In this document: piece by piece, positions 1,052 to 4,719 of the stretch
How the letters are laid out: the number at the start of each line of letters is the position of its first letter
How positions within the stretch are numbered: the stretch's first letter is position 1
NCBI GenBank assembly: GCA_002811645.1
Contig: PDIP01000028.1
Span: forward strand, 124,001 to 188,000
DNA length: 64,000 bases
From: Corallochytrium limacisporum Hawaii
Taxonomy: Eukaryota > Protista > Pluriformea
Direction: 5' to 3'
The notes under the pieces: generated by a model
The model's input: only the letters and a program-made list of their open reading frames with translations
What the model was told of the DNA's origin: nothing
Database searches by the model: none
Position numbers and translations under genes: made by a program

Positions 1052-2947
1052 TCATTCATTGACAAGTCTTGCGTTGTACGTAACCATTTCGCCCAGACCC
1101 TTAACAATTTGGCGCGGTAGCGCATCATATTTGAACTTCTTCGCAACATCCGCTCCCTCAGTTTTCACAGCTTCGATTACGGAGCCGTCGACATGGACGC
1201 GTCCAGTCATTGCCGTAGTCTGCATCCGGCTGGCCAAGTTGACGGTATCACCAATAAGAACCCATCGACGATTTACTGTGCCCAAAATGTCTCCCTGCAC
1301 GCAACCACTACTCAACCCCAGAGTAACCTTGCCGGCAATGCCCCATGGATTGTCCTCGGCACCGAATACGCGCATGTTGCTTACCGCAATCGCAAAGTCC
1401 AGAGCCGTGCTGGCATGAGCTGAGTTTTCTTTCGGGCATCCCGTAATCGAAAACATGGTATCGCTCAAGACGTCAACCTTGGTGATACCGCCAATGCTAT
1501 CCCGGACATCATCTATGCGTTGCCATACATCGTTCAAGTAGGCCAGACGGATATCAGAGTCCAAGCACCCTATAGGTTCGACTTGGATGAAGATGACAGT
1601 GGTGCTATCATAATAGCGGTCTGTATTCTCCAGTTCACCCTCTAGTAGCTGCGCCATAACGTCCTCAGGCATCAGAGTGCCCAGCACTGTGTCACTCAGC
1701 CTCTTAGCATTGCTGACAGCCCGAGCATCCCCCGTGATAGCAGCAACTTCGTGCTGGTGAGTAATCTCCAGCATGCAGTAGTTAATCGTAGAAGATAGGA
1801 CAAACTTAGCCGCCAAATCAGCGAAAACGAAGCCAAGGTTGCTGGCGAAGGGACTGAGGATATCGAAGTAGGTTAGGAAGAATATCAACGGAAACAGAGC
1901 CCAGGTTGTGTAGGACTGGTGGCGGAGCATTCGTAGGATGCCGCTGGAATCTTTTGCTAGAGCAGCCTCCATGCCGTTCAAGTCGCTCTGCACCGCGGAC
2001 ATGCGCCGCAGCAAGGCAGAAGATCGGCGGGCGTGACGTTGCTTCTCTTCGACGTCTAGAAAGCGCATAGCACTCTCAACGCGCTTGAGAGAACCGGTGT
2101 ACATGCTGAACATCTCCAGCTGCAGCTGCATAAAACAGACACCAGACACGAGAAAGAAGGGCAGAGCCATCCAGAACTCAGGAACGATACTACCAAGCAG
2201 ACCACACAGTGATGTTACTGCACTGAGGCTCATGGTGGTTGCGACGTTGTTGACCGTTGGGTACGTCATGTTCTCAACCATGAGCAGAATACCTGGACAT
2301 GTGAAAATCCATTCCAGGTATCGCACAAAATACATCTGGGACTTAGTGTACGGAAGAGTAACCATAGGTGACATGTCTAATGCGCACAGCAAGGCCGTCA
2401 GAAGCGCGATTCCGTTGACCTGACACATGAGCATGCACATGACCTTTCGCTGCTCACTGATACTGACCAGCATGGAAGTCAAATCAAAAGTCATGGCCAT
2501 AGCAAAGAAACATACGCAGACCTCGTCGGTTATCCGCTCGTACTGTATATCCCAATCAATGATGTCGTCATCCTCTTCATCGAAATTCCAGTCCCCGATG
2601 GCCGACTGAGGTTCCCACCATTCCAAACCAAGCAGCTGCTGGCCGTAGAACAAGGTAATGATGAGAGTGATCATGTAAGCGATTGTGTTGTACCAGAAGA
2701 ACTTCTTGGATGCCTCGCGCAGGCGCTGAGCAGACATTTCAGCTGACTGCCAGTGATGGTTGGCACCCCTTGCCTTGACCGATAGCATGTCAACACCGTG
2801 ATCATCTTCTGACATTATGCTGCTAGTGTCGCTACAGCGCCGACTTGACTCGCTTGTGGTACTAGAATACTTGCGCAGATCGGTTAAGGAGTCTTCCTCC
2901 TCTCCCAGGGTTGCGAACTCGGATCGAGACGCAAGTGCGGCTGCCAT
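1052..2947 (-). CDS. Type-1 rhodopsin / class III nucleotidyl cyclase fusion (RhoGC/CyclOp-like enzymerhodopsin, 8 TM), cyclase site partly degenerate
   Basis: First ATG at 2947 (631 aa). TM3 RYLEWIFTCP; TM6 TWALFPLIF; TM7 DLAAK with the retinal Lys at 1805-1807; extra TM0 (FFWYNTIAYMITLIITLF). Linker VLGTLMPEDV. Cyclase motifs LNDVW, KVDVLSD, LSSG, WVLIGDTVNLASRM, VKGLGEMVTY. Confidence 0.93.
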   Translation of the reverse strand: MAAALASRSEFATLGEEEDSLTDLRKYSSTTSESSRRCSDTSSIMSEDDHGVDMLSVKARGANHHWQSAEMSAQRLREASKKFFWYNTIAYMITLIITLFYGQQLLGLEWWEPQSAIGDWNFDEEDDDIIDWDIQYERITDEVCVCFFAMAMTFDLTSMLVSISEQRKVMCMLMCQVNGIALLTALLCALDMSPMVTLPYTKSQMYFVRYLEWIFTCPGILLMVENMTYPTVNNVATTMSLSAVTSLCGLLGSIVPEFWMALPFFLVSGVCFMQLQLEMFSMYTGSLKRVESAMRFLDVEEKQRHARRSSALLRRMSAVQSDLNGMEAALAKDSSGILRMLRHQSYTTWALFPLIFFLTYFDILSPFASNLGFVFADLAAKFVLSSTINYCMLEITHQHEVAAITGDARAVSNAKRLSDTVLGTLMPEDVMAQLLEGELENTDRYYDSTTVIFIQVEPIGCLDSDIRLAYLNDVWQRIDDVRDSIGGITKVDVLSDTMFSITGCPKENSAHASTALDFAIAVSNMRVFGAEDNPWGIAGKVTLGLSSGCVQGDILGTVNRRWVLIGDTVNLASRMQTTAMTGRVHVDGSVIEAVKTEGADVAKKFKYDALPRQIVKGLGEMVTYNARLVNE

Positions 2948-4698
2948 ACTTAAGAAAGTTCTTTGTAAGGCCAGCCGTCCAAGTATACAAACCCTAGGGC
3001 CGCAATATCCCACTATCTTACACTATACGGTTTCCGGCACAAAGGTCCGGCCTACAATAACATTGACTACTTATAACCTAATTTTTCTGTTGCGCGTTCC
3101 TTCAAAATGCTGTTCGAAAGGTAATTTGCAACACTATGATCTAATGATCATTCAGCCTTCGAGTACCAGACAGTCTATCACGCAGGCAGGGCGACTAAAT
3201 GGGAATTGCACCAAGATTTACGACAGTCTACCATCTTCGCGGTTGTGCTACTTATCATACTCCAGCTTTCGTGCGCCAACCACCACTGTGCTCTGTCCGT
3301 GTATTGAATGGATGTCTCACACCACATCTTGTTTCGTGTGCTCTTGGGAATATGAAACACAGGTGCCAGTGGTCCTCCCTACTGCACACTCAATTGGTTC
3401 TCCGTTTCGCTTCACGTACGAGAACTGGAATGGGACCCGCGCTGGAGAACAAGAAGGAAGGAGAACAAAATCTGCACACCCAGCCGACCATAAATCAACG
3501 GCGGAAAATGGAGCGGGTGGGGAACGAGCCGTGCAAAATGGCGGGAGACGAGAACGCCAGGGGAAAGGGGAGGGGGGGGGGGGGGGGAAGAATTGCGATG
3601 AGCTCTGCATACACTTTCAGTACTACCAGGATTGGGATGCGAGCCCACGCAGTGGGCGTTGGACGAATCGAAGTATTTTGCATCCAAGTAACAGCTTTAG
3701 ATTTGTACGGGCTATTCGTGCGTCATGATGGAGCCCGTAAGAAAAATCTTGGCCGTACGAAATGTACATGGAGAATAATGCAGATGCGTACTTCTTCCTT
3801 GCTGCACACTAATTTGGATAGGAGCTGATACACACTGCTTGGAATTTGCTTTGTTTGAAAGTTGTTGGCTGGTACTCCAGCGTATCTGCCATTAGGAATC
3901 CGACGCCTGCCATCGGACATGACATAATGCCATCGTATATGATCGCAATTCAAGAGTCTCCATAAAGGTCCATCCCTAGCTGATTGCCATCAGAGCATCG
4001 TACTGAATCAAGGGTAAGGTGTTGTTATCACACACGGATACGGCAAACTTGCTTTCTCTTTTGATGGTCCGTGTCATAGAACGTTATTATCGCGAAGGAG
4101 TAGCTCCGGTGCTCGTACACCGATATCCCATGTCCTGCCATGTCAGAACTCACCGTGAACCACACAACACAATGAGGTAGCGGGAGTCTCTGTGCGTGTT
4201 GTCTTTGCACAGGACAACATTCATCACAGGACACGACAAGATCACCAACAGGAACCTAACAAATATCAACATGTCTGTGCATATTGATCACGAACATCAG
4301 TTCCACTGCTCACCGGCAAGCCAATTTCTCAGCTCTCGGGTGGGACCTGCATCTCTGATCTATGGCCACCTTTCCCCGCCCCTCAATCGATTCCGTATTT
4401 TGACACTTTGATCGCCCCCTCTTTCTCGGCCCGTCTCCGCTCTGGGCGATCGAATTATATTCACATAGCAAAAATAGTGGTATTCCTTAGATTAACGAGA
4501 CCCCGGGGGAGCGAATAAGGCCAGGTGGACGAGGTTGCCAAGTGATTCCGCTCGCTCGACTCCGCTCGTGAGGGAGTTTGGGTGGTCCCCTACTGAGTTG
4601 TAGAGAAAGTGGCCACGCCAAAGGCCCCCTTCCCCGCACCAACAAGGAGGGAGAGGGAAGGAGGAAAATTCTGTCAACGGAGTCATAGAATTTATCTG

Positions 4699-4719
4699 CC
4701 CCCCCCCCCCCCCCGGGGG
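4699..4719. promoter_or_regulatory. C16G5 tract, example of the recurrent intergenic C(n)G(n) palindrome
   Basis: Seen directly. Similar tracts at 4501, 4792, 5936 and 6441 in the same divergent intergenic region. Regulatory role is inferred. Confidence 0.35.

What the first reader, a model, noticed from the sequence alone, without database searches (positions are those of the whole stretch)
1190..1620. Half-dead cyclase site: obligate heterodimer or pseudo-enzyme of unpredictable specificity
Seen: the first metal-binding Asp (F.D) is Gln (FIQV, 1583-1585) and the following phosphate-binding loop is shortened. KVETIGD reads KVDVLSD: the guanine-selecting Glu is Asp, and the second metal Asp is kept. 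The guanine-selecting Cys is Val (RWVL). The transition-state Asn and Arg (NLASR) are intact. Known: class III active sites form at the dimer interface, one chain giving both Asps and the other giving base-selecting residues plus N/R; heterodimeric rhodopsin cyclases exist in chytrids. Inference: a homodimer should be inactive, so a complementary partner (perhaps a second rhodopsin-cyclase, giving a two-colour sensor) should exist elsewhere in the genome. The D/V pair fits neither GC (E/C) nor AC (K/D).
Basis: partly seen in the sequence, partly recalled or inferred. Interest (0 to 1): 0.8.

Follow-up and report, generated by a model that had tools for sequence, protein, structure and literature searches.

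The report
Split light-gated cyclase, one half
A single-celled marine relative of animals (Corallochytrium) has two light-sensor/cyclase fusion genes; each has lost the opposite half of the catalytic site, so they probably make a cyclic-nucleotide signal only as a pair, and this gene is the more divergent of the two.

Summary
Window 1055-2947 (-) is an intact 631-aa rhodopsin + linker + class III cyclase gene. Against the canonical rhodopsin-guanylyl-cyclase (RGC) set D,E,D,R,C,N,R it reads Q455, D492, D496, T542, V563, N570, R574, with a 4-residue deletion after the phosphate loop. No other of 108 RGC-family proteins lacks the first Asp or the phosphate Arg.

The predicted partner exists. The only other rhodopsin-cyclase gene in this 24-Mb genome (contig C57) keeps D,E,D,R but has C->S, N->T, R->K. 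It is 100% identical to EukProt Clim_evm8s57, so the organism is Corallochytrium limacisporum, a holozoan, not a fungus.

Best reading (0.66): an obligate heterodimer with one composite site, like sGC alpha/beta or tmAC C1/C2. Here the window protein supplies the base pocket (D/V) and N/R. In the known chytrid NeoR/RGC(a) pairs only NeoR is degenerate (T/K).

Limits:
- Binding has only weak modelling support (ipSAE 0.46, best control 0.00).
- Activity, product and colours are untested, and no RNA evidence could be obtained.
- The protein has no orthologue, and its place in the tree is unresolved.

The scan had already read the partner locus the same way (s1-560846). New variant of a known kind.

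The parts
1052..2947 (-). Complete single-exon gene for a 631-aa rhodopsin-linker-cyclase protein (stop codon at 1052-1054).
   Evidence: An open frame of 653 codons has P about 2e-14 by chance. GC 0.514 and GC3 0.604 match neighbouring genes.
1772..2788 (-). Microbial rhodopsin module, residues 54-392: an extra helix TM0 plus seven helices. Retinal-pocket residues kept: R209, E212, W213, T216, C217, W349, D377 and the retinal Lys K381 (1805-1807). The Asp of the 'DC pair' is Ser242 (2222-2224).
   Evidence: PF01036, alignment and AF2 model helices. Of 16 rhodopsin columns conserved at 90% or more, 9 are kept.
1922..2092 (-). Insert of about 57 residues (286-342) in the cytoplasmic loop between helices 5 and 6. 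It is absent from every other RGC aligned and contains RRSS and RRMS motifs.
   Evidence: Alignment. The AF2 model shows it as helical extensions of TM5 (258-307) and TM6 (313-360), with pLDDT 53-71 at the tip.
1619..1771 (-). Helical linker (residues 393-443), continuous with TM7. The distance from the retinal Lys to the conserved linker Pro is 46 residues, as in the partner and in 102 of 105 RGCs.
   Evidence: Five of 6 conserved linker columns are kept.
1055..1618 (-). Class III cyclase domain (residues 444-631), of the 'beta/C2-like' half-site type. Lost: metal Asp 1 (Q455), the phosphate loop and the phosphate Arg (T542). Kept: D496, N570, R574 and K616. The base pocket reads D492/V563.
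   Evidence: PF00211 at 72 bits, PDB hits, residue table, Foldseek TM 0.87-0.89 and rmsd about 2.2 A to RGC cyclase cores. Of 74 conserved columns, 38 are kept; the losses cluster at 449-467, 489-501 and 542-553.
1583..1585 (-). Gln455 codon, at the position of the first metal-binding Asp.
1226..1240 (-). N570 to R574 (NLASR): the transition-state Asn and Arg, both intact.

Best explanation
The gene encodes one subunit of an obligate heterodimeric rhodopsin-cyclase photoreceptor of Corallochytrium limacisporum. Its cyclase domain is the 'beta/C2-like' half. It no longer binds the catalytic metals or the triphosphate (Q455, degenerate and shortened phosphate loop, T542). It still supplies the base pocket (D492, V563) and the transition-state Asn570 and Arg574. 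The genome's only other rhodopsin-cyclase, on contig C57, is the 'alpha/C1-like' half: both metal Asps, the phosphate loop and the phosphate Arg are kept, while Asn is Thr and Arg is Lys. Paired through the equal-length helical linkers, the two domains would form one competent site (metals and phosphates on C57, base and transition state on this protein) and one doubly dead pseudo-site. This is the arrangement of soluble guanylyl cyclase and membrane adenylyl cyclases. Light absorbed by either or both rhodopsins would gate that single site. The product is most likely cGMP, because a carboxylate is kept at the Glu position, but possibly with relaxed selectivity. The signal would act on cNMP effectors such as the CNG-type channel on contig C7. 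Shown here: the residue pattern, its uniqueness, the existence of the complementary paralogue, the conserved fold and the conserved linker length. Inferred: dimerisation, activity, product and light control.
For: 1. The residue pattern is QDDTVNR here against DEDRCNR in 76 of 108 family members, and DEDRSTK in the C57 gene. The losses are reciprocal, not random. In this protein they cluster in the metal/phosphate half, while GDTVN.ASR is kept.
2. The genome has only two rhodopsin+cyclase genes.
3. There is an experimental analogue. Chytrid NeoR cyclases carry the same N->T/V/A and R->K changes, and the isolated RgNeoR cyclase is inactive (PMC10622942). A C57 homodimer should therefore also be dead, which leaves complementation as the only route to activity for either gene.
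4. There are signs of constraint despite a branch of about 5 substitutions per site: an intact 631-aa frame, the retinal Lys and pocket residues kept, a Lys-to-Pro linker length of exactly 46 as in 102 of 105 RGCs, and a cyclase fold at TM 0.88 to 6SIR/5OYH.
5. Q at the D1 position with N/R kept also occurs in C2-like halves of two-domain cyclases (pattern QEDRKNR). Among heterodimeric enzymes, Foldseek ranks sGC beta and AC IIC2 chains ahead of alpha/C1 chains.
6. Complex prediction on linker+cyclase of both proteins gave weak support: ipSAE 0.46, best of 3 controls 0.00.
7. The surrounding pathway is present: a Blh-type beta-carotene dioxygenase and a channel with Ion_trans and cNMP-binding domains in one frame.
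Against: There is no direct evidence of binding or activity. The complex score is only 'weak support'. At 0.60 or under, the mark was reached by only 5 of 78 solved complexes and by all 4 mismatched pairs that passed. Solved cyclase dimers may also be recalled from memory, and the test cannot say which family member binds. No expression data could be obtained. No orthologue exists in 1.8 billion representative proteins, so purifying selection cannot be measured. The cyclase keeps only 38 of 74 conserved columns, and the second Lys of the KGKG motif is Leu618, which could also impair the used half. The two genes are on different contigs, unlike the head-to-head chytrid pairs. Lys in place of Arg in C57 might leave residual homodimer activity.
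Confidence: 0.66

Rival explanations
1. The protein is a catalytically inert pseudo-enzyme or modulator. It binds the C57 subunit, or itself, but contributes no working half-site. It would act as a light-dependent inhibitor or scaffold, or signal through its large cytoplasmic helix 5-6 insert instead of through cNMP synthesis.
For: Only 38 of 74 conserved cyclase columns are kept. The base pocket D/V is non-canonical, and KGKG reads KGLG. The unique 57-residue cytoplasmic insert has RRSS and RRMS motifs. Ser242 replaces the DC-pair Asp, as in bistable NeoRs.
Against: In that case neither RGC of this genome could make cNMP, because C57 lacks N/R as the inactive NeoR cyclase does. Yet C57 keeps 61 of 74 conserved cyclase columns, including every metal and phosphate residue. 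In this protein exactly the residues needed from a C2-like chain (N570, R574, K616, a carboxylate at 492) survive an otherwise extreme divergence.
Confidence: 0.17
2. The protein complements a different, non-rhodopsin cyclase of the genome that has both Asps but no N/R (for example the C1-like orphan on contig C33), rather than the C57 rhodopsin-cyclase.
For: The genome holds several half-site cyclase domains. C33 reads DKDRTEE and C235 reads SKTNTNR, and two tmAC-like proteins carry a C1 and a C2 domain each.
Against: C33 and C235 complement each other. Only C57 shares the rhodopsin + 46-residue linker architecture needed for in-register pairing. C57 is the closest relative of this protein in all databases (E 1e-43), and C57 itself needs an N/R donor.
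Confidence: 0.06
3. The gene is a decaying duplicate that evolves neutrally, a young pseudogene still without stop codons.
For: The branch is very long (5.1 substitutions per site), no orthologues are known and no expression evidence was obtained.
Against: After that much change, an open 631-codon frame is very unlikely without selection (P about 2e-14). Functional residues are kept selectively: K381, D377, R209, W213, N570, R574 and the exact linker length. GC3 is that of local coding genes.
Confidence: 0.05
4. The homodimer is active after all, using another carboxylate (for example Glu457, two residues after Gln455) as the metal ligand.
For: Glu457 is near Gln455, and D496 is kept.
Against: The +2 position is variable and is already Glu in 4 domains that keep D1, so Glu can stand there beside an intact D1, which is no sign that it replaces the metal ligand. 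The phosphate loop is shortened and the phosphate Arg is Thr542 as well, so three separate elements of that half are lost.
Confidence: 0.04

Closest known systems
Heterodimeric NeoR/RGC(a) rhodopsin-guanylyl cyclases of Chytridiales (Rhizoclosmatium globosum RGC1/2 + NeoR; Broser 2020, 2023)
   Same: Two paralogous rhodopsin-linker-cyclase proteins that are expected to work only as a pair. One subunit has Asn->Thr and Arg->Lys in the cyclase: NeoR there, the C57 protein here. The Ser at the DC-pair Asp position of this protein is also found in NeoRs.
   Different: In chytrids the second subunit, RGC(a), keeps every catalytic residue, and its isolated cyclase is active. Here the second subunit has also lost its metal/phosphate half. 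Neither Corallochytrium rhodopsin has the E/D/E counterion triad of NeoR (this protein E/T/D, C57 E/A/D). The genes are on different contigs, not head to head. The host is a holozoan. The tree places C57 with Syssomonas outside all fungal RGCs, and a clade of C57 with the NeoRs is disfavoured (AU p 0.039).
Homodimeric fungal RGCs (BeGC1/BeRGC of Blastocladiella, CaRGC of Catenaria; PDB 6AO9, 6SIR, 5OYH)
   Same: Same architecture (TM0 + 7TM rhodopsin, helical linker, class III cyclase), same linker length, and the cyclase fold superposes at TM 0.87-0.89.
   Different: Identity is only 25-28%. The catalytic set is incomplete (QDDTVNR against DEDRCNR). There are a 57-residue insert in the helix 5-6 loop and a 4-residue deletion after the phosphate loop. 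A homodimer cannot form a complete site.
Pseudo-heterodimeric class III cyclases: soluble guanylyl cyclase alpha1/beta1 and membrane adenylyl cyclase C1/C2
   Same: One chain gives the metal Asps and phosphate contacts, and the other gives the base-specifying residues plus Asn and Arg. This leaves one active site and one degenerate pseudo-site (established knowledge; summarised in PMC8815786). Among such enzymes, the model's best Foldseek matches are the beta1 and IIC2 chains.
   Different: The regulatory module is a microbial rhodopsin on each chain, not a haem domain or a G-protein/forskolin site. The base pair is D/V, not E/C or K/D. From my memory only, and not tested here: sGC beta1 also keeps Asp 2 while lacking Asp 1, and sGC alpha1 also reads Thr and Lys at the N and R positions.

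Membership tests
Rhodopsin-guanylyl cyclase (RGC, enzymerhodopsin) | N-terminal microbial (type 1) rhodopsin with a retinal-binding Lys in helix 7 | tested here: met
   PF01036 at 52 bits, cut-off 24.6. K381, D377, R209, E212, W213 and W349 fall in conserved columns.
Rhodopsin-guanylyl cyclase (RGC, enzymerhodopsin) | Eight transmembrane helices (extra TM0), with helix 7 running into a helical linker of fixed length | tested here: met
   AF2 model helices 54-106, 132-161, 165-189, 207-228, 235-254, 258-307, 313-360 and 366-425. Lys-to-Pro distance is 46, as in 102 of 105 RGCs. This is a model, not a structure.
Rhodopsin-guanylyl cyclase (RGC, enzymerhodopsin) | C-terminal class III nucleotide cyclase domain | tested here: met
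   PF00211 at 72 bits. PDB RGC cores at E 2e-21. Foldseek TM 0.87-0.89.
Rhodopsin-guanylyl cyclase (RGC, enzymerhodopsin) | Complete catalytic set (2 metal Asp, phosphate Arg, Glu/Cys for guanine, Asn, Arg) | tested here: not met
   Q455, D492, D496, T542, V563, N570, R574.
Rhodopsin-guanylyl cyclase (RGC, enzymerhodopsin) | Light-activated cGMP synthesis | not testable with these tools
   Needs expression and a cNMP assay.
Chytrid NeoR/RGC(a) heterodimeric RGC system | One subunit is a NeoR with the E/D/E counterion triad (near-infrared absorbing) | tested here: not met
   This protein reads E212/T216/D377 and C57 reads E/A/D. NeoRs in the same alignment read E..D and E.
Chytrid NeoR/RGC(a) heterodimeric RGC system | The two genes are clustered head to head on opposite strands | tested here: not met
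   The genes lie on contigs C173 and C57. The cluster rule is from PMC10622942.
Chytrid NeoR/RGC(a) heterodimeric RGC system | Descent from the single Chytridiales duplication (membership of the NeoR + RGC(a) clade) | tested here: inconclusive
   The ML tree puts this protein with C57 and Syssomonas (SH-aLRT 98), but with a long-branch warning. Forcing it into the chytrid clade is not rejected (AU p 0.26). C57 with the NeoRs is disfavoured (AU p 0.039).
Chytrid NeoR/RGC(a) heterodimeric RGC system | Activity only on co-expression of the two subunits | not testable with these tools
   Modelling only: ipSAE 0.46 against best control 0.00, which is weak support.
Asymmetric (C1/C2-type) class III cyclase dimer | Reciprocal loss: one chain lacks metal/phosphate residues but keeps Asn and Arg; the other keeps the Asps but lacks Asn and Arg | tested here: met
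   QDDTVNR (this protein) against DEDRSTK (C57).

The most novel reading that the evidence does not exclude
Corallochytrium evolved, independently of chytrid fungi, a two-rhodopsin photoreceptor in which both cyclase chains are half-dead, so catalysis strictly requires the heterodimer. Because the only base pocket is Asp/Val, the enzyme would make something other than plain cGMP: mixed cGMP/cAMP or another cNMP. The divergent rhodopsin (no DC-pair Asp, large cytoplasmic insert) would act as a slow or bistable second input. The whole would be a natural two-input optical logic gate in a close relative of animals.
Probability: 0.15. Interest if true: 0.85.

Novelty: new variant of a known kind. 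Interest (0 to 1): 0.62.

Why it matters
Rhodopsin-guanylyl cyclases have been described and characterised only in zoospore-forming fungi. I found no paper in the held library that links them to Corallochytrium or other holozoans.

In the known heterodimeric RGCs, why the pair is obligate is still unexplained, because RGC1/2 keep all catalytic residues. Here the reason can be read from the sequence: each chain lacks what the other keeps. That gives a clean natural system for testing how two rhodopsins gate one active site.

It would also be a second, probably independent, origin of heterodimeric enzymerhodopsins, with the same Asn->Thr and Arg->Lys solution. The Asp/Val base pocket is a rare natural variant whose product cannot be predicted, which matters for optogenetic tool design. 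Finally, it places light-to-cNMP signalling (retinal synthesis gene, RGC pair, CNG-type channel) in a lineage close to animals.

Tried and rejected
Expression is unknown.

2. Word search for relatives: the only non-self hit, P0002, is a bacterial-type HAMP-cyclase and is irrelevant.

3. Exhaustive HMMER search: no orthologue. The nearest protein is the genome's own C57 paralogue, at 29% identity.

4. P0206 (36% identity, also reads KVDV) looked like a possible orthologue. Its contig L033 shows a kinase-homology guanylyl cyclase with an intact Asp 1 and an intron carrying a GT microsatellite. It is not an RGC and not an orthologue. It serves only as a precedent for Asp at the Glu position.

5. 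Shared promoter motif: both genes have a poly-C tract about 630-660 nt upstream, but such tracts are common (13 in this window), so this was rejected.

6. Phylogenetic origin of this protein: not resolvable. Without C57 it attaches at the base between the Syssomonas group and the fungi. An AU test does not reject the chytrid clade.

7. An RPE65-type carotenoid oxygenase was not found. A Blh-type enzyme was found instead.

8. A hetero- against homodimer comparison could not be run, because only one complex job is allowed.

9. I could not verify the sGC alpha Thr/Lys recollection. A short-query PDB search did not print that alignment.
Full report
**What is there.** The finding lies in the C-terminal third of one open frame, window 1052-3013 on the minus strand. 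From the ATG at 2945-2947 it encodes 631 residues. That sequence is identical, end to end, to a gene model held in EukProt, so the single-exon reading is not only mine.
- Pfam finds a bacteriorhodopsin-like domain (52 bits) followed by a class III cyclase domain (72 bits).
- The best solved relatives are the cyclase cores of the Catenaria and Blastocladiella rhodopsin-guanylyl cyclases, at E about 2e-21.
- GC and GC3 match neighbouring genes, and an open frame this long has a chance probability near 2e-14.

**The observation.**
- Gln455 (1583-1585) stands where the family has the first metal-binding Asp.
- Four residues are missing directly after the beta1-alpha1 phosphate loop, whose own motif is degenerate (FIQVEPIG where the family has FSDIxNFT).
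- KVDVLSD replaces KVETIGD, so Asp492 replaces the guanine-selecting Glu, and the second metal Asp is kept as D496.
- Val563 replaces the Cys. Asn570 and Arg574 are intact.
- I add one more loss in the same functional half: the phosphate-binding Arg of the IRIGL strand is Thr542.

I tabulated these positions for 108 RGC-family proteins. Seventy-six read DEDRCNRKK, and no other member lacks Asp 1 or that Arg. Of 74 cyclase columns conserved at 90% or more, this protein keeps 38. The losses cluster at 449-467, 489-501 and 542-553, while the GDTVN.ASR stretch survives.

**The partner and the organism.** Pfam scans of the whole 24.1-Mb assembly found 14 cyclase matches and 5 rhodopsin matches, but only two loci with both domains: this gene and one on contig C57.
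- The C57 protein keeps Asp 1, Glu, Asp 2, the phosphate loop and the phosphate Arg. It reads Ser for Cys, Thr for Asn and Lys for Arg, and its KGKG motif is degenerate. The two proteins are thus reciprocal.
- The C57 protein is 100% identical to EukProt entry Clim_evm8s57. This identifies the genome as Corallochytrium limacisporum, a unicellular holozoan.
- Its nearest relatives are an RGC of Syssomonas (Colp12, 45% identity) and three metagenomic proteins. These keep both Asps, the Glu, Asn and Arg; the Syssomonas protein has Ala at the Cys position.

**Comparison with the known heterodimeric RGCs.** In the same table, 11 chytrid proteins that carry the NeoR rhodopsin signature (E..D in helix 3, Glu before the Lys in helix 7) read Thr/Val/Ala for Asn and Lys for Arg. 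NeoR is therefore the N/R-less subunit.
- The literature reports that the isolated RgNeoR cyclase is inactive, while the RgRGC1 cyclase is active (PMC10622942).
- The Corallochytrium pair is exactly that missing case. The C57 subunit repeats the NeoR-type Thr/Lys change, and this window's subunit has in addition lost the metal/phosphate half.
- Neither rhodopsin has the NeoR counterion triad, and the genes are not clustered.

**Phylogeny.**
- A quick IQ-TREE (LG+C20) run on 51 proteins puts this protein, C57 and Syssomonas together (SH-aLRT 98), with the three metagenomic proteins next (99). All lie outside 45 fungal RGCs. The NeoR clade is nested in Chytridiomycota as sister to RGC(a).
- Without this protein, C57 is sister to Syssomonas (99). 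Joining C57 to the NeoRs costs 40 log-likelihood units (AU p 0.039). The shared Thr/Lys change is therefore probably convergent.
- This protein's own end branch is 5.1 substitutions per site, and the tool warns of long-branch attraction. Without C57 it attaches at the base. Forcing it into the chytrid heterodimer clade is not rejected (AU p 0.26). Its origin is unresolved. A lineage-specific duplication is the simplest reading, but it is not shown.
- It has no orthologue. In 1.84 billion representative proteins the best non-self hit is C57 (E 1e-43, 29% identity), and only 5 hits pass 1e-30.

**Structure.** I ran an AlphaFold2 model with a 43-sequence alignment (mean pLDDT 78).
- It gives eight membrane helices, with helix 7 continuous with the linker helix (366-425), and a normal cyclase fold. 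That fold superposes on 5OYH/6SIR at TM 0.87-0.89 and rmsd about 2.2 A.
- The 57-residue insert (286-342), found in no other RGC, is modelled as cytoplasmic extensions of helices 5 and 6.
- The distance from the retinal Lys to the conserved linker Pro is 46 residues in this protein, in C57 and in 102 of 105 RGCs. This is a strong sign that signal transmission geometry is under constraint, and that the two linkers can pair in register.
- Among heterodimeric cyclases, Foldseek ranks sGC beta1 and AC IIC2 chains ahead of alpha/C1 chains.

**Dimer modelling.** Complex prediction on linker+cyclase of both proteins gave weak support.
- The score was 0.46, against 0.00 for the best of 3 controls.
- The pass mark was reached by 51 of 78 solved complexes and by 2 of 108 mismatched pairs. 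At 0.60 or under, however, it was reached by only 5 of those 78 and by all 4 mismatches that passed (of 180).
- The runs agree in at least 74% of contacts, and the partner's pLDDT is at least 82.
- Because cyclase dimers are solved, such a pass may reflect likeness only, and it cannot tell which family member binds.

**Mechanism proposed.**
- Shown: reciprocal half-sites, the only two RGC genes in the genome, conserved fold and conserved linker length.
- Inferred: the two chains form a parallel dimer with one composite active site. Metals and triphosphate sit on C57. Base, Asn and Arg come from this protein. The second site is dead on both sides.
- Base selection therefore rests on Asp492 and Val563. 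Asp at that position together with intact Asn and Arg occurs in only 2 of 366 cyclase domains in hand. The other case is a kinase-homology cyclase with a complete catalytic set, so Asp there is probably compatible with activity.
- A retained carboxylate argues for GTP over ATP, but selectivity cannot be predicted.
- Ser242 replaces the Asp of the Asp-Cys pair. Disturbing that pair slows the CaRGC photocycle 5- to 10-fold (PMC8575461), and NeoRs also have Ser there. A slow or modulatory photocycle is possible but untested.

**Context in the genome.**
- A Blh-type beta-carotene dioxygenase lies on C64 (147 bits).
- A 759-aa frame on C7 holds both Ion_trans and cNMP-binding domains.
- Several other half-site cyclases are present.
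- Three stand-alone rhodopsins are present.

**Earlier notes of the scan and verdict.** Note s1-560846 read the C57 locus in the same way, and s1-557763 covers this stretch. I re-derived everything above independently. I rate it a new variant of a known kind.

Noticed in passing
G000:C57:25439-26977 (L018 1276-2814, + strand): This is the complementary rhodopsin-cyclase (EukProt Clim_evm8s57). The public model starts at an internal Met (476 aa). The open frame allows an upstream ATG (MSGDPRK...) that would add the start of TM0. A 4-hydroxyphenylpyruvate-dioxygenase-like ORF lies just downstream on the other strand.
   Followed up: partly
window 1922-2092 (-), residues 286-342: The cytoplasmic insert in the helix 5-6 loop carries two basic-basic-x-Ser motifs (RRSS, RRMS), which look like PKA/PKG-type phosphorylation sites. 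That could give cNMP feedback onto the receptor. This is pure inference.
   Followed up: no
G000:C195:45532-45762 (L009 1489-1743, - strand): An isolated 84-aa open frame encodes only the C-terminal half of an sGC-like cyclase domain (R, C, N, R kept). It is wedged between a SUMO-E1-like gene and a metacaspase-like gene. It is either a relic or a lone exon.
   Followed up: partly
G000:C33:159907-160398 and G000:C235:90053-90619: Two single-domain cyclases have reciprocal half-sites: C33 reads DKDRTEE (C1-like) and C235 reads SKTNTNR (C2-like). They may be a second split pair, of adenylyl type (Lys at the base position).
   Followed up: no
G000:C171:163140-163760; G000:C77:156050-156679 (-) and 161532-162161 (+): Three stand-alone bacteriorhodopsin-like genes (169-180 bits to PF01036). 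Two of them lie about 5 kb apart on opposite strands.
   Followed up: no
G000:C64:43580-44470 and G000:C7:92199-93491: A Blh-type beta-carotene 15,15'-dioxygenase (PF15461, 147 bits; no RPE65-type enzyme was found), and a 759-aa frame combining an Ion_trans domain with a cNMP-binding domain (a CNG/HCN-like channel). These are candidate upstream and downstream parts of the light pathway.
   Followed up: partly
L033 4595-6575 (ENA metagenome contig ctg152695): A GC-rich eukaryote-like or giant-virus-like contig. It carries a kinase-homology guanylyl cyclase split by a frame break at a GT microsatellite (a likely intron) with an Asp/Ser base pair. Its neighbours include an mRNA capping enzyme, a PDEase_I gene and a small GTPase.
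   Followed up: partly
window 3572-3587, 4699-4714 and 11 more: Homopolymer G or C tracts of 10-16 nt are frequent: 13 in 64 kb. One lies about 630 nt upstream of this gene and a similar one about 660 nt upstream of the C57 gene. This is a genome-wide feature, not a shared regulatory element.
   Followed up: yes
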